Virus record (IMG/VR): IMGVR_UViG_3300046517_002304
Coordinates: 447,234-511,233 of that record
Reading direction: 5' to 3' (one strand)
Length of the DNA stretch: 64,000 nucleotides
The notes under the pieces: generated by a model
Seen by the model: the letters and a program-made list of their open reading frames with translations, nothing else
What the model was told of the DNA's origin: nothing
The model's database searches: none
Shown: piece after piece, positions 11,915 to 64,000 of the stretch
Layout of the letters: every line of letters starts with the position of its first letter
How positions within the stretch are numbered: position 1 is the stretch's first letter
Translations under genes and position numbers: made by a program

Positions 11915-14900
11915 TCAAGAACAGTCAGAAACCGCAAAAAATTGGGCCGTAACATCAGTCAAGGTATTGCAATTTACGCTTTGCGTTTTGGTAAAATCAC
12001 TAAGAAAAACAGGGTTGCTGTACATTTTTACGCTTGCGATGTTCGTTATTATACCAGCTTTTTTCAACTTTGAACAGACCTCTTCCAAAGAACGCGCCGG
12101 AATTGTCATGACTTGACGAGACAAGCAGGATGCAGTGCTGTCACTAAGCGGAGGGCATGTTTGAGTAGAACAATTTGTTTCCACAGTATAAAACATCATT
12201 GACCCTTGCCCAATGCTCCATGACAAAACAAGCGTCGTAGAAAGATTGGCGTTCACATTCCAGCTTATTGGAAGACTGATAACATACGTAACTTGTCCGC
12301 CGGTAGATCCGCCACCGAATATTAGGCCGCCGGTTCCAGTATATGAATGTGATAAAACAATACAATCGGCTTGTCCACCGAAGATAAGACCGCCAGTACC
12401 AAAATATATCCTTGTCTCAACATCAGCATCAGCGCTACCACTAAATATCAATCCGCCTGTTCCGATGTAAGAAAGTTGGAAGCTGGCATCACTACTACCA
12501 CTAAATATCAATCCGCCAGATGTGTTGATCCACGTAAGAATATGGTTCACTATTCCTGTACCGCCCAGCATAAGACCGCCAGAGCCGTCTACAACAAAGT
12601 TAGGAATATAATACCCTGATGGGAAAGACGCATGATAATCAAATGCAATTTCATCGGGATCTGAATAATCACTATAAACTATGACTTCATCAATTAAATT
12701 ATTAAACCGATTTCCGCTGCCTGTTGACGGACCATCAATATACCTTGTGCCATTATTCTTAGCACCAATACTAATCGCATCGTGCGACCCAACATTATCT
12801 GCAAGACCGCCATGAATGCCAAATAAAACGCCGTTCAAATACCCGGCGATAACATGTCCGGCAGCGTGGAACGATAATGCAGCATGATATCTTTGATGTG
12901 ATTGTAAAATTGGGGAACTAAAGACATAGTGGAATCCCCAAGCCGGACTGCCGGAATCAGCCGTCATGTTCCAAACAATCATGACAATTACATAAGAATC
13001 TAAATATATCCCAAACCCGCGAGTAATATCACCTTCTTCATAAAGAGTTCGGCGAGTAACAACATCGGCGCCGGTCCTAAACCAAAGTTCGATAGTTCTC
13101 TGAGTATATGGAGTACTGCTATTTATCGCGACATTATCCGGCGATAAAAGATAACTACTAGTTCCACCAAACAGAACAGAAGCATTACTAGGATCAGACA
13201 AAATTAAACTTGTCTGATTTAAAGTAAAGTCACCATGGTAAGTCCCATTCATCGCAGAACCAAGCGAGCCTGAGTTTACCGCAGTTGTCCCAGATGGATC
13301 GTCCAACCTATACCACACTAACGGATTTCTTGACGTAATAGCATTAGCAAATGACGGAAACGTGTTAAAGAATATCCCGCCAGATGGATAAAAATTCATT
13401 ACGGGATAAGAATGAGCGCTGCCCCCAAAATTTAAACCACCACTGCCAAAAAATGGCGTAATAACAAATCCGTTTGCGCCTATAAATGAATTGGCTCTTA
13501 TGGCACACGTAGCAATGTGATTTACCATCGGCATCGCACCAATACTGGCTACACAAAGTAATGGAGCTGCGGCAGGACCATAAACAAAACTAAAATTTAT
13601 CGGTTTGCTAGTTCTATTTATTAAATTAGGATATGACGCCAAGCTATTTGTATAGCTGGCAAGTACCGTGTTCGCTGGTAAAGCACGATTATAAATCCTA
13701 ACATCATCTAAGTACCCTGTAACAAATGATGTGATCTGGTTATAAGATCCGATAACCAAAGGTTGCCCGGAGTCAGATCCATGTGTACCAGTCCCGTCTG
13801 TCGCCCCGGAATAAGATACTTCCACACCATTATAATAAACATGAATATTAGATGCTGCGCTTCCCCCGCGCCATGTAACCACAACATGAGTCCAAGATCC
13901 AAACGGTGGAGGTGCACAACTTCTGGTGCAGTCTGTTCCATTAAATACAACAGCAACAAGTAGAGACGGAATGTTTACTTGGATGTATAGACCAGCGCTA
14001 GCGTTATTGTCGGTCTTATAAATAACCGTACCACTAGAAACTCCCATTATCCAAAAACTAACAGTAAATGGCCCAGTACCGATTAATTCATTGGGTGGAC
14101 CAACTGCCCCCTGTGATGCTCCTCCGAAAAATAAAATGCTACCAAAGCCACCCTTGCGGGATGTGGGGCGATACCCCCCAAGAAAACGTTGTTGCAGATT
14201 TGCAAATAATGCATGATGCTTGCCGACTATATCATACCAATATAAGCCTTGGCTGGTTACCGGCGATGCCAAATACCACGCAGTCAGCCCCTGCGCTAAC
14301 GGATGTTTAAAGTTAACTTGTCTGGCAAAGTTAGTGTTGTTAATCGTAATAGGAAAAGTGCGACTGGCGTTTTGCGCAAACCCGGCTCTTTGTAGAGTAT
14401 TGCCGCCTTCTACATGATCTACTCTTGCATTTAAAATAGCAGATGAACTATTGGCTACTCTGCATATCTGGCCCTCAATTATTACACAATCGCCTCTGCA
14501 TACAATATGAGTAGTTGCTATATGGGCCACTCTGGCGTTGGGCGTAGCGATATTAGAGACAACCGTTAAGTGAGCAGTGCCAACACGTTGACCGGGACTG
14601 AATGCTATAATTGTGGAATTACATATTACGGCACAGGCGCTCTTAATAGTATTCTTGGCCCGGGGATTTAGGCTAACGCTATTTAATACTACACATGTTG
14701 CTACGTGAGCCACTTTAGATCCAGCAGTGCCAATACTTGACGAACAAATAATAGATGTATTGTTGTTAGATGCTACGTGTCCGCTAGCCCCAATGAATGA
14801 ATTACAAACTATCGTCCAATTACCGGGGGCAACTATAGTATTAAAATTTATATATTTATTAGCCCTATTGATAAGTCCAGGGTATGATGTAATGCTATTC

Positions 14901-18741: not shown

Positions 18742-18769
18742 ATTTTACCAGAAAAATCAATAATGTCAA
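18742..18769 (-). promoter_or_regulatory. Sigma70 promoter for the ncRNA candidate
   Basis: TTGACA-N16-TAAAAT with extended -10 TG. Confidence 0.7.
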
Positions 18770-19521
18770 GACGACTTTACCAAAGACGATATCTCTGGCA
18801 TTTTACGCATCTGAGCAGGAATTTCTAGTGCGGCTTGCTCAGCAAATCTTTCATACAAAGAAACATCTAGTCCCGAAATATGATAATGATGAACAATGGA
18901 TGCTTTCACGGCACGCGGCTTATACCCCTTACCCGTCGCAGAAAGAGTGAATAAGAAAGATGCTCCAATGTGTGGTAGCGCTTCATTGAACGGCCCAACC
19001 TCGTCCCAGCACTTCCTGGTGACCATCAGGCACCAATCCTGCAAATAGTCAATCTTCTGATCCTGCATTACATAATGATGCATCTGTGTTCCTACAATAC
19101 CAGAATCCGATGAATCAGATACGCCAATCAATAAATCAAGCCAAGCAGGATTGAGAACGCTAGTATCGGCATGCATAAAAACTAAATACGCCGAATTCTT
19201 ATCCGCTGCTTTTGCGCCTTGATTAGCAGCTTTGGTCCAGTAAAGGTTCTTCTCATTTCTGATTATCTTAATTCTACCATCATCTAATGTATCAAGGTAA
19301 TCCTTAGAATCTTTGCTGGTTGACCCATTATCTACGACAATAATTTCATAATTATTATTCACGCTACAAATAGAAATCGTTTGTAGGCACACACTAAGAT
19401 ACTCAGGCTTATCATTATGAACTACGATAATAGAAACTTGCTCGTCGGTTGCATCGCCAGTTAAATCAATTACTAAATCAGGTCTAGCACCTTCAAGTGG
19501 GTTATGTGGTTTATTTGCCAT
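18766..19521 (-). CDS. GT2 glycosyltransferase
   Basis: VSIIVV...YEIIVVDNGS, IRNEKNLYWTKAANQG, FMHAD. Confidence 0.9.
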   Translation of the reverse strand: MANKPHNPLEGARPDLVIDLTGDATDEQVSIIVVHNDKPEYLSVCLQTISICSVNNNYEIIVVDNGSTSKDSKDYLDTLDDGRIKIIRNEKNLYWTKAANQGAKAADKNSAYLVFMHADTSVLNPAWLDLLIGVSDSSDSGIVGTQMHHYVMQDQKIDYLQDWCLMVTRKCWDEVGPFNEALPHIGASFLFTLSATGKGYKPRAVKASIVHHYHISGLDVSLYERFAEQAALEIPAQMRKMPEISSLVKSS

Positions 19522-38005: not shown

Positions 38006-40456
38006 ATGGAAGATTGTAAGCGACTAGTACTTCTGTGCCAAGAAGCACTAAAAACAAAAGGCATAGACGACACAATACACAATAACCGCCTCAGGTGGGA
38101 ACTCAAGGAATTACAGGTCAAAAATGACTGCGGATATTTCCTGAACATCCATGATAAAGGCGTTAAAAACCAACCTAACCATAAAAATGTATTAGTTCCC
38201 TATTTGCTTGATATCTGTAATGAATTTGATATTACCAAGCTTCCAGAATTCCTAATGGGAGAAATGCCAGATATTGACGTTGACTACCTCCCAGAAATAC
38301 AACAATATCTCAAAAATGATTATGTTCCCAAAGCGTTCGGAGCAGAATACGTTTGCAATATAGGAAGCCACAATACGCTTGGCGTAAAATCTGCGCTTAT
38401 CGACACAGTAAGAATTTATAGCAAAGATAGAGACGAAATTCTTAAGATTACAACTAAACTCCAAGACAAGAATGACGAAGGCAAGCCTATTTCCTTTGAA
38501 GAAGCGATTAACTCTAATTCCGACTTAAAGAAGTATTTGGCCGAAAATCCAGAAATTAAAGAAGCAGCGGGAAAGCTGGTCGGTAAAACTAGAAGCTTTG
38601 GGCAACATGCGGCTGGTGTTATCATATCCAGCGTACCTTTAAAAACCCTAGTGCCACTTATTTCCGGCAAAGATGGGATGCAATGTAGCGCATGGGGCGA
38701 AGGACAGCATAGCCTAGATTTAAGTACAGTAGGATTAATTAAATTTGACTTTCTAGGAAGCGAATCCTTAAACAAAGTCATGCAATGCCTTAAGCTTATA
38801 AAAGAAAGACATGGTATTGAAAAAGTATGTGCGGCACCAGGTGGAGACAACTGGTCAGACATTTCTTATCTTAACGATCCAAAATGCCTAGAAATGGCTA
38901 GTAAAGGCGATCTCAAAACTATTTTCCAGTTTGATTCCGACGTTGCGCGTAAAATGTGCAAAGATGGTGGCGTTGATAGATTTGAAGATTTGGTAGCCTA
39001 TACGTCATTAAACCGCCCAGGATGCTTGGAAATGGGTACAGATGTGGAATTCATCAAGCGCAAAAAGGGCGCTTCATATGAGGTCCACCCGCTTCTAGAG
39101 CCTATCCTAAGAGATACTTACGCGCTAATGTTATATCAGGAGCAACTCTTCCGTATTCTTAACGTGGTGGGCAAAATTCCAGAACATCAATGCATGGAGG
39201 TTCAAAAAGCAGTATCTAAGAAAAAAGTAGATAAGTTCGCAAAATATAAAGAAATGTTCGTAGAAAATGGCCAAAAAGTATTAAACCAATCAAAAGAAGA
39301 ACTAGAAAAACTTTGGGCATTAATTGAAGCGTTCGCCAAGTACTCCTTCAACCTCGCGCACGCCTGTAGCTATACCTATGTTTCTTCCAGAATGTTATGG
39401 TTAAAATGCCACTACCCACTTGAATGGTATGCGGCCTGTATGTCGTCTTTAAAAACAGCCGATTCTAAGCTACAAGAGTATCGTTACGATGGTGTTAAGC
39501 ATGATATAGTTTTTAACCGTCTTGACATTAACAAATCCAAGAGTAATTTTGCTATCGCAGAAGACAACTCAATCTACTATGCTTTCTCTAAGATTAAGGG
39601 AATCGGTGATGATATTGCGGATAGAATTACATCATTGCAACCCTATGCTGATTTAAAGGATTTTCTACATAAGTTCGGAGTTCTTTCTAATACACTAAAG
39701 CCGCTTATAGCACTAAGAATATTCGGCGATGACACAGTTTCTCTATGGAAGGAATATGAAAGATTTAAAGATGGCATTGACCAGAAAATAGAAGATTTAA
39801 ACACTAAGCACGCTGAAACAATAAACAAGCACGCTTCGGAATTAATGTCTCTGCTTCCAGAACAATTGATGGATATCAATTCAATAAGTGAAATAGACAA
39901 ATTAGAAAACATTATAGATGCTAAAATCTATAAGAAGTTATTAAAAATTAAAGAAAAAAACGGCAAAACGATTGAGACATTTAATAAGAAACTAGCCAAA
40001 CTTGAGAATTATGAAGTTAAAATTGAGCCTGAATACGAAAAGCTACTCCTAGACAAAGATGCAGCGGAAATCGCATTTTACGGATTTCCTTGGGACAGCC
40101 CATTATCCAAATACGTATCGGCAGAAGAACATCACTTTGACTGGATGGATGCTAACGGATTAGAAGTAGCGCCCATTAATGTAAGAATTACAAACATACA
40201 AGAAAAACAGGGAAAAGTTAAGTTTTATCAATTAACGGTTCAGGATATTTTAGGTGCGGAAAAGAAAGCAAACATATGGAACTCTGACTATAATATCTGG
40301 AAGGAATTGTTAGTAGTTGGTGCGCTAATAAGAATACAGTTAAAGGCTCCAAATGGCGGTTTTCCAACTTATACGATGACATCGGAACGATTTAAAAAAT
40401 ATGTACGTGGAGTTAACGATTTTAGAATAGTGAATTTAGCAGGAGAAGTAAAATGA
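38006..40456 (+). CDS. dnaE: DNA polymerase III alpha, C-terminal half (palm catalytic Asp, fingers, HhH, OB)
   Basis: MPDIDVDY, GQHAAGVII, GLIKFDFLG, IFQFDS, SLNRPG, YQEQ, YSFNLAHA, KIKGIG; no PHP domain. Confidence 0.95.
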   Translation: MEDCKRLVLLCQEALKTKGIDDTIHNNRLRWELKELQVKNDCGYFLNIHDKGVKNQPNHKNVLVPYLLDICNEFDITKLPEFLMGEMPDIDVDYLPEIQQYLKNDYVPKAFGAEYVCNIGSHNTLGVKSALIDTVRIYSKDRDEILKITTKLQDKNDEGKPISFEEAINSNSDLKKYLAENPEIKEAAGKLVGKTRSFGQHAAGVIISSVPLKTLVPLISGKDGMQCSAWGEGQHSLDLSTVGLIKFDFLGSESLNKVMQCLKLIKERHGIEKVCAAPGGDNWSDISYLNDPKCLEMASKGDLKTIFQFDSDVARKMCKDGGVDRFEDLVAYTSLNRPGCLEMGTDVEFIKRKKGASYEVHPLLEPILRDTYALMLYQEQLFRILNVVGKIPEHQCMEVQKAVSKKKVDKFAKYKEMFVENGQKVLNQSKEELEKLWALIEAFAKYSFNLAHACSYTYVSSRMLWLKCHYPLEWYAACMSSLKTADSKLQEYRYDGVKHDIVFNRLDINKSKSNFAIAEDNSIYYAFSKIKGIGDDIADRITSLQPYADLKDFLHKFGVLSNTLKPLIALRIFGDDTVSLWKEYERFKDGIDQKIEDLNTKHAETINKHASELMSLLPEQLMDINSISEIDKLENIIDAKIYKKLLKIKEKNGKTIETFNKKLAKLENYEVKIEPEYEKLLLDKDAAEIAFYGFPWDSPLSKYVSAEEHHFDWMDANGLEVAPINVRITNIQEKQGKVKFYQLTVQDILGAEKKANIWNSDYNIWKELLVVGALIRIQLKAPNGGFPTYTMTSERFKKYVRGVNDFRIVNLAGEVK

Positions 40457-51083: not shown

Positions 51084-52418
51084 TTATTTATCGGCTACTG
51101 GCTCCAATAAATTAATATCAAACTTATAGTCAATAGCCCGGCCTCGTGCCTCGCTCAAAAACCTACTAAATAGCAATCCGTGGTGCACACTATCAATATC
51201 TGTAATGCCCATTGTATAGAGCACTAGGCTTGACGCTGCACTACCTCTGCCTGGATTAATAGCATTGGTTTCACTAGTTCCCAAAACATCTCTACAATAC
51301 CTGCGAGCTTCATCAATCACTTGTTGTTGTATAAGAAAATACGATGAAAATCCTTTACGGGTAATCAAATCATACTCTTCCGCAATTCTCTTCTTGTACT
51401 CAGTTGTGTTAGGAAGATTTCGTTTTTTAAAACCAACTTTAATTGCTTCTTTTAACTTTTCGTCAGCATCAGGTATTTCCGGCAGTTTAATAGATCGGTC
51501 AATCCTAACGCCTTCTGCCATCTGACAAATTCTTACAGTATTACGCTTTGCTTCTTGATAAATGTCTAGTGGAATAATATCACTAAAATCGTTCTCCCAC
51601 TTTTCATTTAACTGTTGTTCATTCTTGAAATAAATTTGCTTATCTTGTACCTCAAACATATCGTTACCAGCCGCAACTAACTTATCTAGTTCAGCTCTAG
51701 TTCTCTTACTTTGAACCAACAGTAAATTTGTTTGCGCTTCGTGATCTTGCTGGTCCACATAATGCACATCATTAGTTAATACCATATGAATGTTGTGCTT
51801 TAAATGCATCTTTACCAAAAACTGGTTGAACGCTCGTTGTGGCGCATAATCAATCATCATCATTTCAAGATAATAATTATCACCAAACACAGAACGATAA
51901 TCTAGAATCATTGCTTCGGCTGCATCTTCACCATGATTAACAAATGCCTGTCCTACTTCCCCCATAATACAGCAAGAGCCAACAATTAATCCTTCAGAAA
52001 ACTTCTTAAGAACGTCCCAGTTAACTCTAGGCTTGTAATAAAAGCCATGTATCTCGGCAAAACTAGTAATCTGTACTAGGTTGCTGTATCCTACATTACT
52101 AGCCGCAATTAAAAGAAGATGATAAGATTTCTTAATCTTAACTCGTTCTTCTGGGGGTAGGTCAGCAAAAGTATCTGGGTTATGCGCTCGCTGTATGTAT
52201 ATTTCACAAGCAATTACCGGCTTTGTCCCAAATTTATCACATGCTCTTAGCTGTGATGGAACAGCAGCCATTGATCCATGATCGCTCAAGCAAAGATACT
52301 GATGATTATTTTTCTTTGCTTTCTCAGCGTATTGATGGCAGAAACCAACAGCATCTAGAATACTCGCTTCAGCACTATGAAGATGAAGATGCTCAAATCC
52401 AGTAATTTCCTGTTTCAT
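51084..52418 (-). CDS. dnaE: DNA polymerase III alpha, N-terminal half (PHP domain plus first palm segment)
   Basis: HLHLHS, SDHG, HLLLIA...GY.NL, FYYKPR, YYLE, TNDVHY, GFSSYFL, PGRGSAASSLV.Y..GITDID, LLFSRFL. Confidence 0.95.
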   Translation of the reverse strand: MKQEITGFEHLHLHSAEASILDAVGFCHQYAEKAKKNNHQYLCLSDHGSMAAVPSQLRACDKFGTKPVIACEIYIQRAHNPDTFADLPPEERVKIKKSYHLLLIAASNVGYSNLVQITSFAEIHGFYYKPRVNWDVLKKFSEGLIVGSCCIMGEVGQAFVNHGEDAAEAMILDYRSVFGDNYYLEMMMIDYAPQRAFNQFLVKMHLKHNIHMVLTNDVHYVDQQDHEAQTNLLLVQSKRTRAELDKLVAAGNDMFEVQDKQIYFKNEQQLNEKWENDFSDIIPLDIYQEAKRNTVRICQMAEGVRIDRSIKLPEIPDADEKLKEAIKVGFKKRNLPNTTEYKKRIAEEYDLITRKGFSSYFLIQQQVIDEARRYCRDVLGTSETNAINPGRGSAASSLVLYTMGITDIDSVHHGLLFSRFLSEARGRAIDYKFDINLLEPVADK

Positions 52419-56594: not shown

Positions 56595-58673
56595 ATGACA
56601 GTCAGTCCACTCAAGAGTCGGTTTGACAATCTGGCGGAAAAGTTCCCCAAAAAGGAATTTGACACCCTTCACGAAACGATGACGTTTAGTGAATACTATG
56701 ATCTGGTTCACAAGAACCCTGCCTTGGCAAGAACCTCGCACCAACGCATATACGATATGATTTTGGTCAAGGGCACCGAAACAATCAAGCGATGCAACAA
56801 GACGGTGACCATTTACAAGTTCTTCAATGATTCACAGTTTCCTATCTTCGGACTGGAAAACACTCTTGAAGAACTTGTGCGGGTCTTCCGTTCGGCTGCC
56901 GGGTTTTACGGAACCGAAAAACGAATTATTCTTCTTCACGGACCTGTGGGTAGTTCAAAGTCAACTATCTGCCGCCTGATTAAGAAAGAGCTTGAGGCGT
57001 CCTCCAAGACTGACGCTGGAGCACTTTATAGCTTTTCTTGGAAGGATCTTCCTCCCGATCTGGAATCGGAAAGCTGTATCAACTGCCCCATGCACGAAGA
57101 CCCACTGAATTTAATTCCTAAATTCATGCGTGCCGACTTGGAGAAGGAACTCAACGAAATTCACCAGGAGCAGTATCGTGCTCGCTTCCCTGGCGAAACC
57201 CCATACCCCATCCGCATTCGCGGTGAACTTGATCCGCAGTGCCGATTCTTCATGGAGCACTTGCTCAAGCAAGAAAAGGGCGACCTGAAAGCGGTTCTAG
57301 ACAAGTACATTGAAGTACGCCGAATCTGCTTCTCTGAAGCTGACCGTTGTGGTATCGGCACCTTCCAGCCGAAAGATGAAAAGAATCAGGACTCAACCGA
57401 ACTTACTGGAGATATTAACTTCCGTAAGCTTGGCGAACTCGGCAAGGATTCTGACCCCAGAGCGTTCAGCTTTGACGGTGAATTCAATATCGCCAATCGC
57501 GGTGTGATTGAATTTATCGAAGTGCTGAAGCTTGACAAGGCGTTCCTGTATGACCTGCTCGGTGCTGCTCAGGAACAGCAGATTAAGCCTAAGAAGTTTG
57601 CACAAACTTCTATTGACTTGGCAATCATCGGGCATACGAATAATCCTGAATTCCAAAAGCTTCAGGCAGACCGAACGATGGAAGCTATCAAGGATAGAAC
57701 CATCAAGATTGACGTTCCTTATCTGCTTGAAGTAAGCAAGGAACTGATGGTCCTCCTGCAAGATTACGGGAACGGCAAGGTGCCTCAGCACATCGCTCCC
57801 CATACTTTGGAAGTAGCCGCACTTTGGGCGGTTTGCACTCGCCTCAAAGACCCTCAGGACAAGAGTTGCTCGCTGATTGAAAAGGCCAAACTCTACGACG
57901 GGAAGATCCTGCCTGGATGGACCGAAGACAGAGTGAAGGAACTGCGGTTGACGGGTGGCGAAGGAATTGAAAAGGGCATGTCGGTGCGATATACCCAAAA
58001 TAAGATTTCCAACGCCCTTGTTAATAACAAACAATACATCAATCCATTCATTGTCTTGAACGAAATCCAGAATGGATTAGACAAGACTCCGCTGATTGAT
58101 GACAAGAAGGACTTGGAATACTATCTGACCTGCATCACCCATGTGAGAAATGAATTAAACAACATTCTCAAGAAGGAAGTGCAGGAAGCAATCTCTCTTG
58201 ACGGAAATCAGATGGAACGGCTCTGCCAAAAGTATATGAATAACGTTGTCGCCCACATTGAAGGGACAAAGATAACGGACCCGTATACCAACGAAGAGCA
58301 AGACCCAGACGAACCGTTGATGCGAGCGATTGAGGAAAAGATTGACATTCCCGAACCTCTTGCGGATGACTTCCGACGCTCTCTCGCTGGCTTCGCTGGT
58401 GGACTGGCGATGAAAGATAAGAAGTTTGAGTGGGATAGCAATCCCAAACTCAAGAAGGGTCTTGAGAAATACATGTTTGAAATCAGCAAGGATACCATCA
58501 ACATTGCCAAGCTGAACAATGGTGGACAAGTTGTCGGCCACGATCAGCAGGAAAAGATTGACACTATCCGTGGGCGACTCATTGAGCGCTTCGGATACAA
58601 CGAACAGTCGGCAACCGATGTGATGAACTACGTCAGCCAACTCTTTGCCCGAGGCGACATCGCCGAAGAGTAA
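56595..58673 (+). CDS. prkA: PrkA/YeaG AAA+ serine protein kinase
   Basis: LHGPVGSSKST, CPMHEDPL, GIGTFQPKDEKNQD, DPRAFSFDGE...ANRG..EF.E. Confidence 0.97.
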   Translation: MTVSPLKSRFDNLAEKFPKKEFDTLHETMTFSEYYDLVHKNPALARTSHQRIYDMILVKGTETIKRCNKTVTIYKFFNDSQFPIFGLENTLEELVRVFRSAAGFYGTEKRIILLHGPVGSSKSTICRLIKKELEASSKTDAGALYSFSWKDLPPDLESESCINCPMHEDPLNLIPKFMRADLEKELNEIHQEQYRARFPGETPYPIRIRGELDPQCRFFMEHLLKQEKGDLKAVLDKYIEVRRICFSEADRCGIGTFQPKDEKNQDSTELTGDINFRKLGELGKDSDPRAFSFDGEFNIANRGVIEFIEVLKLDKAFLYDLLGAAQEQQIKPKKFAQTSIDLAIIGHTNNPEFQKLQADRTMEAIKDRTIKIDVPYLLEVSKELMVLLQDYGNGKVPQHIAPHTLEVAALWAVCTRLKDPQDKSCSLIEKAKLYDGKILPGWTEDRVKELRLTGGEGIEKGMSVRYTQNKISNALVNNKQYINPFIVLNEIQNGLDKTPLIDDKKDLEYYLTCITHVRNELNNILKKEVQEAISLDGNQMERLCQKYMNNVVAHIEGTKITDPYTNEEQDPDEPLMRAIEEKIDIPEPLADDFRRSLAGFAGGLAMKDKKFEWDSNPKLKKGLEKYMFEISKDTINIAKLNNGGQVVGHDQQEKIDTIRGRLIERFGYNEQSATDVMNYVSQLFARGDIAEE

Positions 58674-58707
58674 TCTGACTTGTGTCCTTGGTAGAGAATT
58701 TTATAAA

Positions 58708-58747
58708 CGCCTAGTAGGTAAAACTTCACTGTGATACCTACTAGGCG
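58708..58747 (+). terminator. Intergenic hairpin (attenuator or mRNA stabiliser) between prkA and yeaH
   Basis: CGCCTAGTAGGTA / TACCTACTAGGCG 13-bp stem. Confidence 0.65.
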
Positions 58748-58786
58748 AATTATTTTAAATACAAACATCAAAATAAGGAATCAATC

Positions 58787-60016
58787 ATGCCTAACGGTAT
58801 TCAAGAAGACTTTGATGATTTCCAGCAAATCATCGGTGGCAAGAAGCGAGAAGAACTTAAGCGACATATCCAAACTGGAGAAATCTTTGGGCAAAGACCA
58901 AACGGTCGCGGTGCTCTCAGTATTCCCATCAAAAGAATTGAACTTCCTTATATAACTCACGGTGAAGAAAAAGACGGTGTAGGAAGTGGTCCCGGCAAAC
59001 CTGGCGATGTCATCGGCAAAAAGCCAGGCAAGGGCGACGGCAAGGGTGGACACAAGCCCGGCACAAATCCTGGCGAAGGAATGTTGGTTGACGTTGACAT
59101 GGAAGAAATCTGGAAGGAACTTCAGGAAGAATTGAAGCTTCCTAATATGCAGCCGAAGGATACACCTACGTGGGAAGATATAGAAGTTAAGTATAACGGC
59201 ATTTCCCGACTTGGCCCCAGATCGCTTCTGCATCCGAGAAGAACATTCAAGGAATGTCTGAAGCGCGAAATCGCCCAGACTGGTGGAAAATTAGAAAAGA
59301 AAATAGTGCCTGGGTGTAATCGCCCCGTCACGGTTTTCCATCCAATCAAGGACGATTTCAGATACCGTCAGTATAATGAAATTAAGAAACCGTCATCCAA
59401 TGCCGCCATCTTCTTCGTAAGAGACGGCTCTGGCTCCATGGACGATAATAAGTGCGAAATAGTAAGCGATGTATCTTTCTGGATTGATGCTTGGATCAGA
59501 AGGTTCTACAAAACCACCAAGAAGATTTATGTCTGGCACGATACTGAAGCGAAAGAACTCAGTGAGAAAAAGTTCTATAACCTCAGGTACGGTGGCGGAA
59601 CATACGCAACATCTGCAATGGAATTCGTTGAGAGACAGCTTTATCACAGAGTACCTCCCCAGAAGTGGAACATCTACGTATTCTACTTCGGCGACGGTGA
59701 AACTTTCGGTAGAGACAACGACGCCTTTGTTGAATTGCTAAAAACTAAACTCGGGCCTCAGGCCATTAACCTGACTGGTGTTGTCCAGATTCTCAGTTAT
59801 TCTTATACAGGAACTTTGAAACATTCTATTGACTTGGCTCTGGAATCTGGTAAACTGGATAAGAAGTTTGTGAGAACTGTTTCTGTGGGCGATGAAAAAG
59901 ATCACGGATACGGCAGCTACCAAACTATGACTCCGGAACAAAAAGGACAGGCTGTTAAAAAGGCTATATCGGCTTTGCTTGGAGCAAAGGCAACAGAAAC
60001 TACGGCCAAAGCTTAA
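58787..60016 (+). CDS. yeaH: YeaH/YhbH (DUF444) vWA-like protein
   Basis: Gly-rich GxGxG tract, L.LPN..PK, DDFRYR, RDGSGSMD, GGT, WNIY.FYFGDGE. Confidence 0.93.
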   Translation: MPNGIQEDFDDFQQIIGGKKREELKRHIQTGEIFGQRPNGRGALSIPIKRIELPYITHGEEKDGVGSGPGKPGDVIGKKPGKGDGKGGHKPGTNPGEGMLVDVDMEEIWKELQEELKLPNMQPKDTPTWEDIEVKYNGISRLGPRSLLHPRRTFKECLKREIAQTGGKLEKKIVPGCNRPVTVFHPIKDDFRYRQYNEIKKPSSNAAIFFVRDGSGSMDDNKCEIVSDVSFWIDAWIRRFYKTTKKIYVWHDTEAKELSEKKFYNLRYGGGTYATSAMEFVERQLYHRVPPQKWNIYVFYFGDGETFGRDNDAFVELLKTKLGPQAINLTGVVQILSYSYTGTLKHSIDLALESGKLDKKFVRTVSVGDEKDHGYGSYQTMTPEQKGQAVKKAISALLGAKATETTAKA

Positions 60017-60064
60017 TTTTAAATTTTATCAGTAAAAATCAAGCTTTCACAAGAAAGAAATAAA

Positions 60065-61630
60065 ATGCACGTTGCACCGATGCTTTCTGGCGACAACACA
60101 ATTCCGGGAGAACTCATTCCTCCCGATGTTCAAAAAAGAATCCCCGAAATTTTTGACGCTTGCGCAAAATTCGGATTAGACTATCCGCCGACAGTCGTTG
60201 AATTCCTTGACTGGGATACGATGGCCGAAATCTGTTCTTACGGCGGATTTCCCAGCCGATACCCTCACTGGAAGTGGGGTATGGAATGGGCAGATTTCCG
60301 AAAGAATTATCTCGCTGGAAGAATGCGAGTTTATGAAATAGTAATTAATTCAAACCCAGTTGAGCTGTACTGCCTCAACAGCAACACTCACACGGATAAC
60401 GTTACGGTAATTGCTCACGCTCTGGGACATGCTGACTTTTTTAAGAACAATATATTCTTTAAATCTACGAGCCAGAATGCAGTCAATGAACTTGCCTGCC
60501 ATGGTACCAGAATTCGCAAATACCAAAGTCGTAGAGGGCGTGAACAAGTCAGTAAGTTTCTTGATAAGCTGCTGATGATTGAAACCCTCATTGATCCGGC
60601 TGCGGCGTGGGATAAGCCTAAGTGCAAGGATGTTATTGTTTCTGATAAAAGAGACTACAAATATCCAAGGAAGCACAAGATTGCTGATGGGCATGAATAT
60701 ATGCATGACTGGATTAATACTCCAGAGCATATGAAAAAAGAAGAACACAGAATTAAAATGGACGAAATAAAAGCTGAGCTTTCTATTTTCGGACAAGCCA
60801 CCAGAGATATCTTCGGCTTCCTAATGAAGAATGCTCCCCTTAAACCTTGGGAGCAAGATATCATGGCTATGATTTACAGAGAAGGACTTTACTTCTCGCC
60901 TCAGCGCCCCACCAAAGTCAGCAATGAAGGATTCGCCTCTTGGGTTGATTTTAATATTATGGCGAGACTAGGCATGGCCGACTCTTCTGGAATCATGGAT
61001 TACTCTCACCACAAAGCGGGTGTGCTTGGTGGGAAATACTCAATGAATCCATACAAGTTAGGATTTAACATCCTGCTTGACATTGAGGAGCGTTGGAATA
61101 AGGGCCGCTTCGGCGACGACTACGAAAAGTGCGACAGCTACGATGAAAAGAGAAACTGGGACAAAAAACTTGGTCTTGGAAAAGAAAAAGTTTTTGAAGT
61201 CCGCGAATACTACAACGACATGATGCTGATTCATGAGTTCGTCACCGAGGACTTCGTCGCGAAAAATGAGATGTTTGAATGGGCGTTACTGCCTAACGGC
61301 GAATATCAAATTGTTTCTCGCAATGCGAAGGAAATTAAGAAGAAGTTGCTCAGGAAATTCATGAATGGCGGACTTCCAGATATCCACCTTGAAGATCCTA
61401 ACTACAAGGGTAAGAACTACCTGTTGTTGCAACACAACTGGGATGGACGACTTCTTAAAGACAAATGGATAAGAGAAGTCTTGCCGTCTCTCTTCTTCCT
61501 TTGGAAGCGACCCGTATTCCTCGCTACTAGAAACAAAAGCGGCGAAGAAATGGTCTATGTATGCGACAGCGATGATTACAAGAAAGTGCAATACGTCACC
61601 AGGAAAGAACTGGACGCAAGCATACGATGA
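60065..61630 (+). CDS. spoVR: SpoVR/YcgB family protein
   Basis: G.P.RYPHW.WG, YEIVINSNP, AHALGHADFFKNN, YF.PQ..TK..NEG.AS, NPY.LG. Confidence 0.96.
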   Translation: MHVAPMLSGDNTIPGELIPPDVQKRIPEIFDACAKFGLDYPPTVVEFLDWDTMAEICSYGGFPSRYPHWKWGMEWADFRKNYLAGRMRVYEIVINSNPVELYCLNSNTHTDNVTVIAHALGHADFFKNNIFFKSTSQNAVNELACHGTRIRKYQSRRGREQVSKFLDKLLMIETLIDPAAAWDKPKCKDVIVSDKRDYKYPRKHKIADGHEYMHDWINTPEHMKKEEHRIKMDEIKAELSIFGQATRDIFGFLMKNAPLKPWEQDIMAMIYREGLYFSPQRPTKVSNEGFASWVDFNIMARLGMADSSGIMDYSHHKAGVLGGKYSMNPYKLGFNILLDIEERWNKGRFGDDYEKCDSYDEKRNWDKKLGLGKEKVFEVREYYNDMMLIHEFVTEDFVAKNEMFEWALLPNGEYQIVSRNAKEIKKKLLRKFMNGGLPDIHLEDPNYKGKNYLLLQHNWDGRLLKDKWIREVLPSLFFLWKRPVFLATRNKSGEEMVYVCDSDDYKKVQYVTRKELDASIR

Positions 61631-61833
61631 AAAAAGCATTCCTAGATGGCCTGAAGGGCATGTCGTTAAAAACTGCTCAGCAAATATGTCTATCAGAAGG
61701 ATTTGATGTCTACATCATGGAAGATGGACTGCCTCTAGGAATGGCTGCGGTGCCTGATCTAATCGTGCTTTGGCATAAACATGATGTAATTACCGAAGCG
61801 TTTGCAGGCGACCCTTGCCAGATAGAAAATTAA
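61627..61833 (+). CDS. Small hypothetical protein
   Basis: ATGA coupled to spoVR. Confidence 0.55.
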   Translation: MKKAFLDGLKGMSLKTAQQICLSEGFDVYIMEDGLPLGMAAVPDLIVLWHKHDVITEAFAGDPCQIEN

Positions 61834-61845
61834 TAATGAAACTAT

Positions 61846-62793
61846 TTAACCGCCAACTAGTTTCACCCAAATACTAATAGCCTTGCCCAATTTCACATAA
61901 TACTCGTCCATAGTTTTTTGCAATCCATCTGCAATCTCTAGCATGCACTCGCTTGGCGTACTGCCCACCATAGGAATATCATCTATAACTTTCCAAAAAG
62001 TTTCATTCCTCTGAATTCCAGCAGCTTCTTTAATCAAATTAACAAAGCAATTACTTGCTCTTGAGTGATTCACAAAAGGCTCGCCAACGGCCACCAATAA
62101 ATTTAAATGATGGCAAACCTTTAATAAAATTACCCCGCACCAGATATCATCAAACCTTGAGAACATCTGATCTTCTCCCATTAATGGAAAATACATTAAT
62201 GGGAGAATTTCTTTTTTAAAACATAAATTCATTCCGCAAACTGGCATATATTTACCATTAGGGACAATCATAGTTCCATTCGGAACAGAGTCGCACTCAG
62301 GATTTCTCAACCGATTAAGTTCTTGTGGAGCATCATAATCAAGATTATTAATCCATAGGCCCGCATTCAAAACAACATTATTCATCAAACCCAAATTTTG
62401 ATATGGAAATCCCCTGGTCTTAATATTAGGCACTGATTCAATCCACTTAGACTGTTCTGACAACTGCTTAACATGCTTCTTTACGAAATCGTCACCTACC
62501 GGCATGCAATCATCGTCTAAAGTAAAAACGTAGTCCGCGCCAAGTCGCCTCACTGCTGCATAAAATCCAAAATTTCTTACGGCAGAATCTTTCTTGCTAA
62601 TAATCCATGAATTATCTTTAAGTGAATCTTGTATCTCTTGCCAAGAATAATGACAGTCAACATCTATATTAAATGTTTTCTTTGGGCCATCTTCAACAAC
62701 AACAATATAATCCCACTGTTTAAGATCCCATGATCCAAGAAACTTTTTTAAATTACTTTCACGATTAGAAGGAATTACTAGGGCTGTGGTCAT
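61846..62793 (-). CDS. Reversibly glycosylated polypeptide / UDP-arabinopyranose mutase family (GT75)
   Basis: KDSAVRNFG, TLDDDC, RGFPY, GLW...DYDAP, P.CGMNL.F, MYF.LMG, RFDDIWCG, HSRASN.FVNL.KE. Confidence 0.88.
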   Translation of the reverse strand: MTTALVIPSNRESNLKKFLGSWDLKQWDYIVVVEDGPKKTFNIDVDCHYSWQEIQDSLKDNSWIISKKDSAVRNFGFYAAVRRLGADYVFTLDDDCMPVGDDFVKKHVKQLSEQSKWIESVPNIKTRGFPYQNLGLMNNVVLNAGLWINNLDYDAPQELNRLRNPECDSVPNGTMIVPNGKYMPVCGMNLCFKKEILPLMYFPLMGEDQMFSRFDDIWCGVILLKVCHHLNLLVAVGEPFVNHSRASNCFVNLIKEAAGIQRNETFWKVIDDIPMVGSTPSECMLEIADGLQKTMDEYYVKLGKAISIWVKLVGG

Positions 62794-64000
62794 AAAGAAT
62801 TTTATCAATTATATCTGTAGTAGACGGTAAATCAAACTTAGGAGTCAAGATTACGTTATCTTCTCCAACTATAGAGCATCCTACTATTTCACTTTTAGAA
62901 ACATAGTCGCCACCTTTACATATGTAATTTGGGACTATTACTTTAATTATTTGCTCAGGAGTAACCTCGTCAAACGAAACAACAAAATCAATACAATCAA
63001 GCAAAGATAATGTTGTCATCCTATCATTCAATGAAATGACTGGCCTGCTATCGCCCTTGAGCTGTTTAACACTCTTGTCAGAGTTAACCCCTACAACTAG
63101 CTTGCATCGTCTCTTATCCGCTTCACTTTTAGCATACTGTAATTGCTTAATATGAGACGCATGCAACAAATCGTAGCATCCATTCGTAAAAACTAAACCA
63201 AAATCTCTCAGCTTTAAATCTAACGGATTTACTATTTTGCCGGACAAATCGGCAGGACTCACTGGCTGGTTCATACCTTTTTGCACATAAGATGCACCGG
63301 CGTTCCATGCAATTTCAATCGCATCCGGTATTTCAAACCCATGTCCTAAAGACAAGGACATAACCGCAACAAAGGCATCGCCGGCACCTACTGAACTTTT
63401 GGCTTTTACCATACGCTTAGGCTCATAACAAAAATAATCTTTATTATAAACTCCAGAAACGATTCCGCCACTGTGCGTAATTACAACAGACTTACACTGA
63501 AGTATGTTCTGTAAATAAACAGATTGCTCTTTCCAGTTTTTAAGGCCAGTAAATCTTTCGGCCTCAATAGCATTAAGCTTAAACACAGTACAGCCAATCC
63601 ATTTAGATAAATCTCCATCTTTTGGATCTACTATCGTAATATTATTTTTAAATGGCTCAATGTAATTAAAATCAGGCTTAGAAAAAAATCCCTTTGAGTA
63701 GTCTGATAGCACAATTACCGTAGACGCACTACATTTAGTTTTTATATTATTAATAACTTGATTTACCGCATTCTCAATATCACTTTGTGTCGTCCCGTAT
63801 AACGGTGGCTCAATATCATGTCTAATTATCTGAATGCCTTCGCTGGTTAAAAATCGTCTTTTAACAGGCATAGAAAAAAACGACTCATCTGATGGATACA
63901 GACATTCAATCTGATTTTCACGAAACAACCAATTGTACCTCGGGTCGTAAAGACATCCTAGCTTAACCGACGAATTAAAATACTTAAACTGCGCAGCAAC
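62765..64000 (-). CDS. hldE: Bifunctional ADP-heptose synthase HldE (PfkB kinase plus cytidylyltransferase-type domain), 5' truncated by window
   Basis: LSDYSKG, VDPK, VGAGDAF, FTNGCYDLLH..H, GVNSD.SV..LKG..RP, KGGDY; frame stays open to 64000. Confidence 0.93.
   Translation of the reverse strand, partial: VAAQFKYFNSSVKLGCLYDPRYNWLFRENQIECLYPSDESFFSMPVKRRFLTSEGIQIIRHDIEPPLYGTTQSDIENAVNQVINNIKTKCSASTVIVLSDYSKGFFSKPDFNYIEPFKNNITIVDPKDGDLSKWIGCTVFKLNAIEAERFTGLKNWKEQSVYLQNILQCKSVVITHSGGIVSGVYNKDYFCYEPKRMVKAKSSVGAGDAFVAVMSLSLGHGFEIPDAIEIAWNAGASYVQKGMNQPVSPADLSGKIVNPLDLKLRDFGLVFTNGCYDLLHASHIKQLQYAKSEADKRRCKLVVGVNSDKSVKQLKGDSRPVISLNDRMTTLSLLDCIDFVVSFDEVTPEQIIKVIVPNYICKGGDYVSKSEIVGCSIVGEDNVILTPKFDLPSTTDIIDKILYDHSPSNSF

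What the first reader, a model, noticed from the sequence alone, without database searches (positions are those of the whole stretch)
61846..62793. Plant-type RGP/UDP-arabinopyranose mutase (GT75) in a phage, coupled to hldE
Seen: strong motif-by-motif similarity to plant reversibly glycosylated polypeptides, including DDD and the RG(F/Y)P arginine; it overlaps the 3' end of hldE. Known: RGPs interconvert UDP-Arap and UDP-Araf and self-glycosylate on Arg; HldE makes ADP-heptose. Inference: it may be a ring-contraction mutase supplying furanose sugars, possibly on NDP-heptose, to the phage GTs.
Basis: partly seen in the sequence, partly recalled or inferred. Interest (0 to 1): 0.65.

Follow-up and report, generated by a model that had tools for sequence, protein, structure and literature searches.

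The report
Megaphage GT75 sugar ring-contraction mutase
A 511-kb soil phage encodes what looks like an intact enzyme of the plant "RGP" family, which converts activated six-ring sugars into five-ring sugars. The gene is real and belongs to a large, unstudied phage and bacterial branch of that family, but its position next to a heptose-activating gene looks like a recent rearrangement rather than a conserved pathway.

Summary
**Observation: confirmed.**
- Window 61846-62793 (-) encodes a 315-aa protein that matches Pfam RGP/GT75 over nearly the whole profile (E 2e-40).
- Its AlphaFold model matches only the two solved GT75 enzymes, rice UAM2 and MtdL (TM 0.74-0.78). Every catalytic residue defined for MtdL is present.
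- Its ATG lies 29 nt inside the 3' end of a full-length HldE-like gene.
- The record is a complete 511-kb soil/rhizosphere phage.

**Interpretation: partly supported.**
- The protein is not specifically plant-type. It is 23% identical to rice UAM2 and 21-22% to actinobacterial MtdL, but 44-54% identical to more than 1000 metagenomic proteins. At least 99 IMG/VR viral contigs carry a relative, and the query sits in a clade of viral contigs that includes several huge phages.
- The link to hldE is not conserved:
  - none of the 80 best phage HldE loci has a GT75 gene within 10 kb;
  - only one other viral contig pairs the two genes;
  - three related huge phages carry both genes more than 100 kb apart;
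  - in relatives, HldE sits in a ThyA-DHFR-HldE-PrkA-DUF444-SpoVR block that has no GT75.

**Best reading.** An active, metal-dependent NDP-pyranose/furanose mutase that feeds phage glycosyltransferases. The residues at the base and sugar sites favour a UDP-sugar. The acceptor is unknown. An NDP-heptose substrate is possible but unsupported. It is a new member of a known kind.

The parts
61846..62793 (-). GT75/RGP-family CDS, 315 aa from ATG 62793 (an alternative TTG at 62808 gives 320 aa), stop at 61846-61848
   Evidence: ORF list. Pfam PF03214 E 2.3e-40. The start was chosen by alignment to 40 homologs and by reading the sequence. AF2 model pLDDT 93.2. Foldseek top hits are 8cid and MtdL.
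62509..62517 (-). DXD motif D98-D99-D100, equivalent to MtdL D109-D111 (Mn2+ and sugar binding)
   Evidence: Codons checked. Invariant in A1 and, apart from substitutions at the middle residue in seven loci, in 85 loci. Role taken from PMC9937993. HMMER alignment to MtdL.
62401..62415 (-). R132-G-F-P-Y. R132 is equivalent to MtdL R159 and the plant RGP Arg that is self-glycosylated and proposed as the nucleophile.
   Evidence: R132 is conserved in all 85 loci. The alignment to 8cid places it on VRGYPF. Role from PMC9937993.
62146..62157 (-). R218-F-D220-D221. R218 is equivalent to MtdL R257 (beta-phosphate and sugar binding). D221 is equivalent to MtdL D260 (proposed general base).
   Evidence: PMC9937993. 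The inactive class-2 enzyme OsUAM2 (8cid) has Thr at the R218 position.
62059..62067 (-). H248-S-R250. H248 is equivalent to MtdL H287 (Mn2+ ligand). R250 is equivalent to MtdL R289 (diphosphate binding).
   Evidence: PMC9937993. OsUAM2 has Arg in place of the His.
62338..62340 (-). D157, equivalent to MtdL D195, which is essential for mutase activity
   Evidence: PMC9937993.
62584..62589 (-). D74-S75 at the base and sugar specificity site. MtdL has S86-D87 here; active UDP-using plant RGPs have D-S.
   Evidence: HMMER alignment to MtdL. The paper's S86D and D87S mutants were made to match active RGPs. D74 is invariant across 121 close homologs and S75 is nearly so (114 of 121).
62765..62793 (-). 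29-nt overlap between the hldE 3' end and the GT75 5' end. The hldE stop TAA (62765-62767) lies across GT75 codons S14 and N15.
   Evidence: Sequence read and codon check.
62765..64000 (-). HldE-like bifunctional sugar kinase/nucleotidyltransferase. Residues 63-473 lie in the window; the first 62 residues lie across the record's terminal-repeat junction (G000 bases up to 313).
   Evidence: PDB best hits are HldC 5x9q (E 6e-23) and HldA 4e84 (E 1e-11).

Best explanation
**What it is.** The gene encodes a catalytically competent GT75-family enzyme. This is a divalent-metal-dependent, flavin-independent NDP-sugar pyranose/furanose mutase. In characterised family members a conserved arginine is self-glycosylated and is proposed to attack C1 of the sugar, which opens the six-membered ring and lets it re-close as a five-membered ring. 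Here that arginine is R132.

**Where it belongs.** It sits in a clade of GT75 genes carried by soil and freshwater viral contigs, including several huge phages. It is not a recent plant import.

**Inferred role.** It supplies an NDP-furanose donor to phage-encoded glycosyltransferases, as part of a phage sugar toolkit. This genome also holds an HldE-like gene, an HldD-like SDR and several GT2-like genes.

**Most likely substrate.** A galacto-configured UDP-sugar taken from the host pool (UDP-L-arabinopyranose or UDP-D-galactopyranose). The reasons are that the base and sugar-site residues match UDP-using plant enzymes rather than GDP-using MtdL, and that the phage encodes no pathway for such a sugar itself.

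**What is shown and what is inferred.**
- Shown: family membership, fold, conserved catalytic residues, clade and gene context.
- Inferred: mutase activity, substrate and acceptor.

**The overlap with hldE.** It probably reflects co-transcription within a glycan-related gene pair that arose by rearrangement in this lineage.
For: **Family and fold**
- Pfam RGP E 2.3e-40.
- Profile search of the PDB: UAM 1e-29, MtdL 1e-26.
- The AF2 model has pLDDT 93.2.
- Foldseek gives TM 0.78 to OsUAM2 and 0.74-0.77 to MtdL. The next hits are generic GT-A enzymes at TM about 0.4-0.5.

**Catalytic residues**
- Every residue shown by mutagenesis to be needed in MtdL is present: D98 (the first Asp of the D98-D100 DXD motif), R132, D157, R218 and D221. 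The Mn2+ ligand H248 is present as well.
- Each of these residues is conserved in all 85 loci.
- H248 and R218 are exactly the residues lost in inactive class-2 plant RGPs.

**Specificity sites**
- P13 and D74-S75 match active UDP-using RGPs.

**Distribution**
- More than 1000 homologs at about 45-54% identity.
- At least 99 viral loci.
- The query lies in a 22-row clade that includes contigs of 332-595 kb.

**Context across loci**
- GT75 genes commonly sit beside NDP-sugar SDRs, GT2 or GT4 transferases and methyltransferases.

**Own genome**
- GT2-like genes and an HldD-like SDR are present.
Against: - No biochemical data exist for any phage GT75.
- Position 42 is Pro, which is neither the plant Asp nor the MtdL Asn. 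Position 15, the residue that stacks on the base, is Asn instead of the usual Ile. Nucleotide specificity is therefore uncertain.
- The phage encodes no UDP-xylose or UDP-arabinose pathway and no GalE. Only one SDR was found. A UDP-sugar substrate would have to come from an unidentified host.
- The nearest glycosyltransferase gene is more than 40 kb away in the window.
- The operon partner is an HldE-like enzyme, which points to a different sugar.
Confidence: 0.68

Rival explanations
1. **The first reader's idea.** The GT75 enzyme acts on the product of the overlapping HldE-like gene. It would ring-contract ADP- (or another NDP-) heptose to an NDP-heptofuranose for phage glycosyltransferases.
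For: - The two genes overlap by 29 nt on the same strand.
- An independent viral contig (L077, 229 kb) has the order HldE, GT2, GT75. Its proteins are only 32% (GT75) and 26% (HldE) identical to those here.
- All four huge phages checked that carry a close GT75 relative also carry an HldE-like gene.
- The genome has an HldD-like SDR (TIGR02197, E 9e-39).
- Small-phage cassettes join an RfaE-domain-II-like nucleotidyltransferase, a 4,6-dehydratase-like SDR and a GT75 gene.
- Heptofuranose exists in nature: 6-deoxy-D-altro-heptofuranose in C. jejuni HS:41 (PMC12369002).
Against: - None of the 80 best viral HldE loci has a GT75 gene within 10 kb.
- The closest GT75 relatives have no HldE neighbour.
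- In three related huge phages the two genes lie more than 100 kb apart.
- The ancestral HldE position lacks GT75.
- The GT75 specificity residues here match clade members that are not linked to HldE, and differ from those in L077.
- The one derived change, I15N, is forced by the embedded hldE stop codon.
- Known GT75 substrates are all galacto-configured, and MtdL is inactive on GDP-glucose.
- No GmhA-like or GmhB-like gene was found in the phage.
Confidence: 0.15
2. The furanose donor made by this enzyme is used to hypermodify phage DNA, by furanosylating a hydroxylated pyrimidine. The GT75 enzyme would then be a flavin-free counterpart of the UDP-galactopyranose mutase carried by some phages.
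For: - In a 114-kb contig, a 47%-identical clade member (P0081, locus L118) lies two genes upstream of two TET-associated DNA glycosyltransferase (TAGT, PF20691) genes.
- Phage DNA carries arabinofuranose chains on 5-hydroxycytosine. Pootjesviridae encode a UGM proposed to make UDP-Galf for DNA glycosylation (PMC13326640).
- In relatives, HldE sits beside ThyA-like and DHFR genes.
Against: - This phage's genome shows no TAGT and no thymidylate-synthase homolog. It shows no Tet/JBP hit either, but the control for that search was uninformative.
- No DNA glycosyltransferase family was identified near the gene.
- This reading concerns the acceptor, so it is compatible with the main explanation rather than opposed to it.
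Confidence: 0.1
3. The protein is not a mutase in vivo. It would be either an arginine-directed glycosyltransferase or self-glycosylating protein, or a non-catalytic RGP-like subunit like plant class-2 RGPs.
For: - GT75 enzymes do carry out arginine glycosyl transfer (PMC9937993).
- Plant class-2 RGPs are inactive as mutases.
Against: - Inactive class-2 proteins lack the equivalents of H287 and R257. Here H248 and R218 are present and invariant.
- All residues needed for the MtdL mutase reaction are kept.
- Only one GT75 gene is present in the genome, so there is no catalytic partner.
Confidence: 0.07

Closest known systems
Plant reversibly glycosylated polypeptides / UDP-L-arabinopyranose mutases (GT75; OsUAM1/3, AtRGP1-3; structure of OsUAM2, PDB 8cid)
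   Same: - Same Pfam family and the same fold (TM 0.78).
- Shared DXD motif, RG(F/Y)P arginine, Mn2+ histidine, and equivalents of R257 and D260.
- Base and sugar-site residues P13 and D74-S75 are as in active UDP-using plant enzymes.
   Different: - Only 23% identical to OsUAM2.
- About 30-45 residues shorter.
- Pro at position 42 where plants have Asp.
- Asn at the base-stacking position 15.
- It sits in a phage and bacterial clade, not among plant sequences. It is encoded by a 511-kb phage next to an HldE-like gene.
MtdL and Hyg20, actinobacterial GDP-L-galactose / GDP-L-fucose pyranose-furanose mutases (GT75; PDB 7xpr, 7yua)
   Same: - Same fold (TM 0.74-0.77).
- All residues shown to be essential in MtdL have equivalents here, apart from the two substitutions listed on the other side (D87, Q229). 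The Mn2+ ligands are also present.
   Different: - 21-22% identical.
- The guanine-recognising residues T13, N42 and S86 are replaced by P, P and D.
- The sugar-site residues D87, S228 and Q229 are replaced by S75, G192 and M193.
- There is no antibiotic-cluster context.
FAD-dependent UDP-galactopyranose mutase (Glf/UGM), including phage-encoded copies in Pootjesviridae
   Same: It performs the same kind of reaction, NDP-pyranose to NDP-furanose. It sets a precedent for a phage carrying its own ring-contraction mutase, there proposed to supply UDP-Galf for DNA glycosylation (PMC13326640).
   Different: The fold and cofactor are unrelated: flavin there, against metal plus arginine here. No homology.
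HldE (RfaE) / HldA + HldC, ADP-heptose synthesis; viral heptose biosynthetic enzymes (Tang et al. 2024, as summarised in PMC11461863)
   Same: - The overlapping upstream gene has the same two-domain architecture.
- Its best PDB and NCBIfam matches are the heptose enzymes.
- HldE-like genes are common in phages: at least 444 IMG/VR loci.
   Different: - It scores below every NCBIfam HldE cut-off (222 bits against 521).
- The (F/L)XXGXSTT motif is degenerate (FDLPSTT).
- The phage has no GmhA-like or GmhB-like gene.
Phage UDP-D-arabinofuranose pathway: arabinose-5-P isomerase, bifunctional kinase/pyrophosphorylase AfhE, HAD phosphatase AfhF (RB69, DLP3, HY126)
   Same: A phage-encoded route to an NDP-furanose donor, built around a bifunctional anomeric kinase/nucleotidyltransferase. 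The logic parallels the heptose pathway (PMC13326640).
   Different: That route builds the furanose directly from a pentose phosphate and needs no mutase. Its enzymes are not homologous to HldE or to GT75.

Membership tests
GT75 / RGP (Pfam PF03214) | Sequence matches the family profile above the curated cut-off over most of its length | tested here: met
   139.3 bits against a cut-off of 23.8, E 2.3e-40, profile positions 9-336 of 342. Found again in the whole-genome scan.
GT75 / RGP (Pfam PF03214) | GT-A Rossmann-like N-terminal region, a family-specific core and a C-terminal helical region, as in MtdL and OsUAM2 | tested here: met
   AF2 model pLDDT 93.2, pTM 0.92. The top seven Foldseek hits are all GT75 structures (TM 0.74-0.78). 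After them comes a gap to generic GT-A enzymes at TM about 0.4-0.5.
GT75 / RGP (Pfam PF03214) | DXD motif that binds Mn2+ and the sugar (MtdL D109-D111) | tested here: met
   D98-D99-D100. The first and third Asp are invariant in 85 loci; the middle residue is replaced in seven.
GT75 / RGP (Pfam PF03214) | Conserved arginine that is self-glycosylated and proposed as the nucleophile (MtdL R159, OsUAM1 R158) | tested here: met
   R132 in RGFPY aligns with VRGYPF of 8cid. Conserved in 85 of 85 loci.
GT75 / RGP (Pfam PF03214) | Residues that separate active mutases from inactive class-2 RGPs: the Mn2+ histidine (MtdL H287) and the beta-phosphate arginine (R257), plus D195 and D260 | tested here: met
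   H248, R218, D157 and D221 are all present. OsUAM2 (class 2) has Arg and Thr at the first two positions. Roles from PMC9937993.
GT75 / RGP (Pfam PF03214) | NDP-pyranose/furanose mutase activity and reversible arginine self-glycosylation | not testable with these tools
   Needs purified protein, Mn2+ and NDP-sugars.
Plant-type (UDP-L-Ara) subgroup of GT75 | Groups with plant RGPs rather than with prokaryotic or viral GT75 | tested here: not met
   23% identity to OsUAM2 and 21-22% to MtdL, against 44-54% to phage and metagenomic proteins. The query lies in a viral clade. No plant sequence was included in the tree, so this rests on identities.
Plant-type (UDP-L-Ara) subgroup of GT75 | UDP-type residues at the three base-selectivity sites (MtdL T13, N42, S86, which are P, D, D in active RGPs) | tested here: inconclusive
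   P13 and D74 match the UDP type. Position 42 is Pro. The base-stacking Ile15 is Asn.
HldE (bifunctional heptose 7-P kinase / heptose 1-P adenylyltransferase), for the overlapping neighbour | PfkB kinase domain followed by a cytidylyltransferase-like domain, scoring above the NCBIfam equivalog cut-off | tested here: inconclusive
   The architecture is met. HldE is the best hit (E 1e-65), but the scores are below the cut-offs: 222 of 521 bits for the whole protein, 128 of 345 for domain I and 130 of 181.5 for domain II. The best PDB hits are HldC and HldA.
Complete ADP-heptose pathway in the phage | GmhA (SIS isomerase) and GmhB (HAD phosphatase) present alongside HldE and HldD | tested here: not met
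   No SIS_2 hit and no TIGR01656 hit in the 511-kb genome. There is an HldD-like SDR below its cut-off. The summary in PMC11461863 reports the phosphatase as absent from viruses.

The most novel reading that the evidence does not exclude
In this phage, and independently in the 229-kb viral contig L077, a flavin-independent GT75 mutase has been recruited next to an HldE-like kinase/nucleotidyltransferase. The pair would make an NDP-heptofuranose. That would be a nucleotide sugar with no known biosynthetic enzyme, and a new manno-configured substrate class for GT75.
Probability: 0.12. Interest if true: 0.75.

Novelty: new member of a known kind. Interest (0 to 1): 0.42.

Why it matters
**State of knowledge.** GT75 enzymes are the only known flavin-free route to NDP-furanoses. 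They have been characterised only in plants and in two actinobacterial antibiotic pathways (PMC9937993).

**What this adds.** An intact GT75 gene is a recurrent feature of large environmental phages: at least 99 IMG/VR contigs, including genomes of 430-600 kb. It often sits beside NDP-sugar dehydratases or epimerases and glycosyltransferases, and in one case beside DNA glycosyltransferases. This suggests phages make their own furanose donors.

**Why that is timely.** Furanosylated phage DNA (arabinofuranosyl-5-hydroxycytosine, and Galf proposed to be made by phage UGM) has only just been described (PMC13326640).

**Practical value.** These compact phage enzymes (about 315 aa) could become tools for making NDP-furanoses enzymatically.

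**Caveat.** The gene in this window is an ordinary member of that clade. Its link to hldE is probably local and recent.

Tried and rejected
1. **Synteny with hldE, from both sides.**
   - tblastn and jackhmmer with the phage HldE against about 92 GT75 loci found HldE only in the phage's own contig, in L077 and in L007, a bacterial MAG where it lies 6 kb away beside a true HldD.
   - Searching 80 viral HldE loci with nine diverse GT75 proteins found nothing.
   - I therefore rejected conserved coupling.
2. **Asn15 as a marker of HldE linkage.**
   - All three HldE-linked GT75 proteins have N15.
   - However, 25 of 121 close homologs have it too, and three of those that I checked have no HldE neighbour.
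   - In this phage the Asn codon AAT overlaps the hldE stop codon TAA, so the change is explained by the gene overlap.
   - Rejected as a specificity signal.
3. **GmhA and GmhB in the phage genome.** Neither was found.
4. **GT9 heptosyltransferases.** There are six weak hits, but each covers only 30-60 profile positions apart from the weakest (about 120, E 0.004). Two of the proteins also carry TPR repeats, and the ORF next to the HldD-like gene gave no Pfam hit. This is not solid evidence for heptosyltransferases.
5. **GT4 (Glycos_transf_1).** None found.
6. **DNA-modification enzymes in the own genome.** No TAGT, thymidylate-synthase homolog or Tet/JBP hit. For Tet/JBP the control rang nowhere, so that absence is not informative.
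7. **Other searches.**
   - Megablast of 24 kb of the window against cultured and deposited phages found no match.
   - PHROGs gave only a weak 'glycosyltransferase' hit.
   - NCBIfam has no model for the protein.
8. **Promoter and terminator scan of 61400-64000.** Counts were no higher than in shuffled sequence, so the scan is uninformative.
9. **STTR5 motif of HldE nucleotidyltransferases.** The motif is degenerate here, with Lys five residues before STT. No conclusion on NTP choice is possible.

**Tools and rules.**
- Not used: the large representative protein search, read laying and complex prediction. No claim in this report depends on them.
- No alternative genetic code was needed.
Full report
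**1. What is in the sequence**

- The minus strand of window 61846-62808 holds an ORF of 320 codons from a TTG. An ATG at 62793 gives a 315-aa product starting MTTALVIPSNRE.
- It matches Pfam RGP (PF03214) at E 2.3e-40, 139 bits against a cut-off of 23.8, over profile positions 9-336 of 342.
- The upstream gene on the same strand has PfkB and cytidylyltransferase domains. Its stop codon, TAA at 62765-62767, lies 29 nt downstream of the GT75 ATG, so the two genes overlap.
- The window is the last 64 kb of a 511,233-bp virus record with direct terminal repeats, rated 100% complete. After joining the 127-bp repeat, the HldE-like gene is complete at 473 aa. It faces a divergently transcribed class-III aminotransferase.
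- Downstream, the GT75 stop is 12 bp from the end of a convergent operon of PrkA, DUF444, SpoVR and a 68-aa ORF.
- The same DNA is held by soil and rhizosphere metagenome runs from six studies, two of which may be the source of the assembly.

**2. Is it a real, intact GT75 enzyme?**

Yes, as far as sequence and a predicted structure can show.

- A profile built from the protein and 40 homologs finds only GT75 chains in the PDB: rice UAM2 (8cid) at 1e-29 and MtdL at 1e-26.
- The AlphaFold2 model is confident (pLDDT 93.2, pTM 0.92).
- Foldseek returns OsUAM2 (TM 0.78, 23% identity) and MtdL (TM 0.74-0.77, 21-22% identity). After these there is a large gap to generic GT-A transferases at TM about 0.4-0.5.
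- The MtdL structure paper (PMC9937993) defines the functional residues. Each has an equivalent here, read from the HMMER alignments and checked codon by codon:

| MtdL residue | Role | Residue here |
|---|---|---|
| D109-D111 | DXD motif | D98-D100 |
| R159 | self-glycosylated, proposed nucleophile | R132 (in RGFPY) |
| D195 | essential for mutase activity | D157 |
| R257 | beta-phosphate and sugar binding | R218 |
| D260 | proposed general base | D221 |
| H287 | Mn2+ ligand | H248 |
| R289 | diphosphate binding | R250 |

- Apart from R250, which is Lys in many loci, and the middle residue of the DXD motif (replaced in seven loci), these residues are conserved in all 85 viral and bacterial homologs examined.
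- The paper notes that inactive class-2 plant RGPs lack H287 and R257. The class-2 structure 8cid indeed has Arg and Thr at those positions, whereas the phage protein keeps His and Arg. The protein therefore resembles active mutases.

**3. Is it 'plant-type'?**

Not specifically.

- It is about equally distant from the plant and the actinobacterial structures.
- It is 44-54% identical to a very large set of metagenomic proteins: 1071 hits at E 0.001 or better in the word-indexed search.
- IMG/VR holds at least 99 viral loci that encode a relative. A deposited 595-kb uncultured phage has a 47%-identical copy.
- In a FastTree of 91 sequences, the query falls in a 22-row clade (local support 94). 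The clade is made of viral contigs and a few NCBI metagenome-derived proteins, and includes contigs of 332, 436, 572 and 595 kb.
- The closest hits that carry an organism name in either protein search are Planctomycetes, for both GT75 and HldE; GT75 copies in Alphaproteobacteria and Actinomycetes MAGs are about as similar. The Planctomycetes names are a weak hint about the host.
- GT75 has been listed among soil-phage auxiliary genes (statement in PMC12016548). I found no study of a phage GT75 enzyme.

**4. What the specificity sites say**

- The MtdL paper identifies T13, N42 and S86 as base-selectivity sites, which are P, D and D in active UDP-using RGPs. It also shows that D87, which is S in RGPs, contacts the sugar.
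- The phage protein has P13, P42, D74 and S75. D74 is invariant and P13, P42 and S75 are nearly invariant across 121 close homologs. Three of these four positions therefore look like the UDP-using plant enzymes and none looks like MtdL.
- The base-stacking Ile15 is Asn here. Asn occurs in 25 of 121 close homologs.
- In this phage the Asn codon AAT shares two bases with the hldE stop codon TAA. An Ile codon at that position would remove the stop. The gene overlap therefore explains the substitution.

**5. Is the link to hldE a pathway signal?**

Evidence in favour:

- The overlap itself.
- An independent case in a 229-kb viral contig (L077) with the order HldE, GT2, GT75. Its proteins are only 32% (GT75) and 26% (HldE) identical to those here.
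- Small-phage cassettes in which an RfaE-domain-II-like nucleotidyltransferase and a 4,6-dehydratase-like SDR precede a short GT75 gene.
- Presence of both genes in all four huge phages checked.
- An HldD-like SDR 14 kb away across the record junction.

Evidence against:

- The closest GT75 relatives sit next to unrelated genes: PAS, PIF1-like helicase, DnaJ, methyltransferases and homing endonucleases.
- In the three other huge phages, GT75 and HldE are more than 100 kb apart (with GT75 positions).
- The closest HldE relatives lie in a conserved block of ThyA, DHFR, HldE, small ORFs, PrkA, DUF444 and SpoVR, with no GT75. In this phage the hldE-GT75 pair is inverted relative to the PrkA block, so the juxtaposition is derived.
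- HldE-like genes are very common in viral contigs, with at least 444 loci. None of the best 80 has a GT75 gene within 10 kb.
- The phage has no GmhA-like or GmhB-like gene.
- Chemically, every characterised GT75 substrate is galacto-configured (L-Ara, D-Gal, L-Fuc, L-Gal). MtdL does not convert GDP-D-glucose, and the authors ascribe this to the position of the C4 hydroxyl. Manno-heptose has the gluco-type C4. That last step is my inference.

I conclude that the adjacency supports 'same glycan-related gene set, probably co-transcribed'. It is at most weak support for 'HldE product is the GT75 substrate'.

**6. Context across the family**

- I clustered 1925 ORFs from the loci. The commonest neighbour of GT75 is an NAD-dependent SDR, present in 22 of 86 loci and often overlapping the GT75 gene.
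- These SDRs are mixed:
  - GDP-L-fucose-synthase-like next to a 48%-identical clade member (L019);
  - NDP-hexose 4,6-dehydratase-like in the small-phage cassettes;
  - a true GalE in a Xanthobacteraceae MAG.
- GT2, GT4 and FkbM-type methyltransferase genes follow in frequency.
- One clade member (P0081, L118) lies two genes upstream of two TET-associated DNA glycosyltransferase genes and a sulfotransferase-like gene.
- This is notable because phage DNA is now known to carry arabinofuranose chains on 5-hydroxycytosine, and Pootjesviridae carry a flavin-dependent UGM proposed to supply UDP-Galf (PMC13326640).
- In this phage's genome I found no TAGT and no thymidylate-synthase homolog. I found no Tet/JBP hit either, but that control was uninformative. 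DNA remains only one of several possible acceptors.
- The genome has one solid GT2 gene in the window (18766-19521, E 1e-17) and several marginal GT2-like and GT9-like hits.

**7. Verdict**

- The gene is best read as an active GT75 NDP-pyranose/furanose mutase of a phage-borne clade. It would feed an NDP-furanose to phage glycosyltransferases, and a UDP-sugar substrate is favoured (confidence about 0.68).
- DNA furanosylation as the end use is a further, compatible possibility (about 0.1).
- A non-mutase role is unlikely (about 0.07).
- It is a new member of a known enzyme kind in an under-described setting. I rate it as moderately interesting rather than surprising.

No alternative genetic code was used. 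The large representative protein search, read laying and complex prediction were not used.

Noticed in passing
window 56595-61833 (+); loci L113, L114, L115: A PrkA (AAA plus kinase), DUF444 (YeaH-like), SpoVR module is encoded by the phage. In related huge-phage contigs of 116-618 kb the same module lies downstream of ThyA, DHFR and HldE in conserved order. It is a bacterial stress and sporulation-type module kept by a phage lineage.
   Followed up: partly
window 51084-52418 (-) and 38006-40456 (+): The DNA polymerase appears split into two genes about 11 kb apart on opposite strands. The 444-aa product matches positions 42-439 of PHROG 405, and the 816-aa product matches positions 441-1045.
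   Followed up: no
window 62765-64000 plus G000 bases 1-313: The hldE-like gene straddles the ends of the linear record, which has a 127-bp direct terminal repeat. Any annotation of the unjoined record would truncate it.
   Followed up: yes
G000:C1:338-1648 (+) (locus L101): A class-III aminotransferase lies 25-60 bp from the hldE start, depending on which start codon is used, and is transcribed divergently. Its best NCBIfam hit is L-lysine 6-transaminase at E 3e-99, below the cut-off.
   Followed up: no
G000:C1:9848-15543 (locus L101): Just past the record junction lie several genes of note: a phiEco32-like COOH-NH2 ligase, an HldD-like short SDR (262 aa), a Methyltransf_23 gene and several ORFs without a family. 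A subtilase and a trypsin-like peptidase lie nearer the junction.
   Followed up: partly
locus L118 6001-10418: A 47%-identical GT75 gene is followed, two genes on, by two TET-associated DNA glycosyltransferase (TAGT, PF20691) genes and then a sulfotransferase-like gene, on a 114-kb contig. This is a lead that some phage GT75 enzymes serve DNA glycosylation.
   Followed up: partly
loci L058, L063, L076 (and L060-L074 in part): Roughly 40-kb phages share a compact cassette close to the terminase gene. Its order is cytidylyltransferase-like NTase, NDP-hexose 4,6-dehydratase-like SDR, a short GT75 (about 290 aa), an unknown 289-aa protein and an FkbM methyltransferase.
   Followed up: partly
window 62173-62207 (+): A 14-bp-stem hairpin followed by a T-run lies on the plus strand inside the GT75 coding region, about 340 nt past the end of the convergent PrkA-SpoVR operon. 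The count of such sites is no higher than in shuffled sequence.
   Followed up: no
phage records PV340852.1 and PV340853.1 (hits H2, H3): Synechococcus phages Sf-CH5 and Sf-CH8 (host WH8102) carry a distant GT75-like gene (27% identity over 70% of the query) annotated as hypothetical. They are a possible experimental handle.
   Followed up: no
loci L015 and L016: These are two closely related phage contigs. L016 carries an extra IS605 OrfB/TnpB (Cas12f-like) gene, inserted about 2 kb upstream of its GT75 gene, that L015 lacks.
   Followed up: no
window 11915-16852 (-): A 1645-aa ORF has only a weak PHROG hit of unknown function.
   Followed up: no
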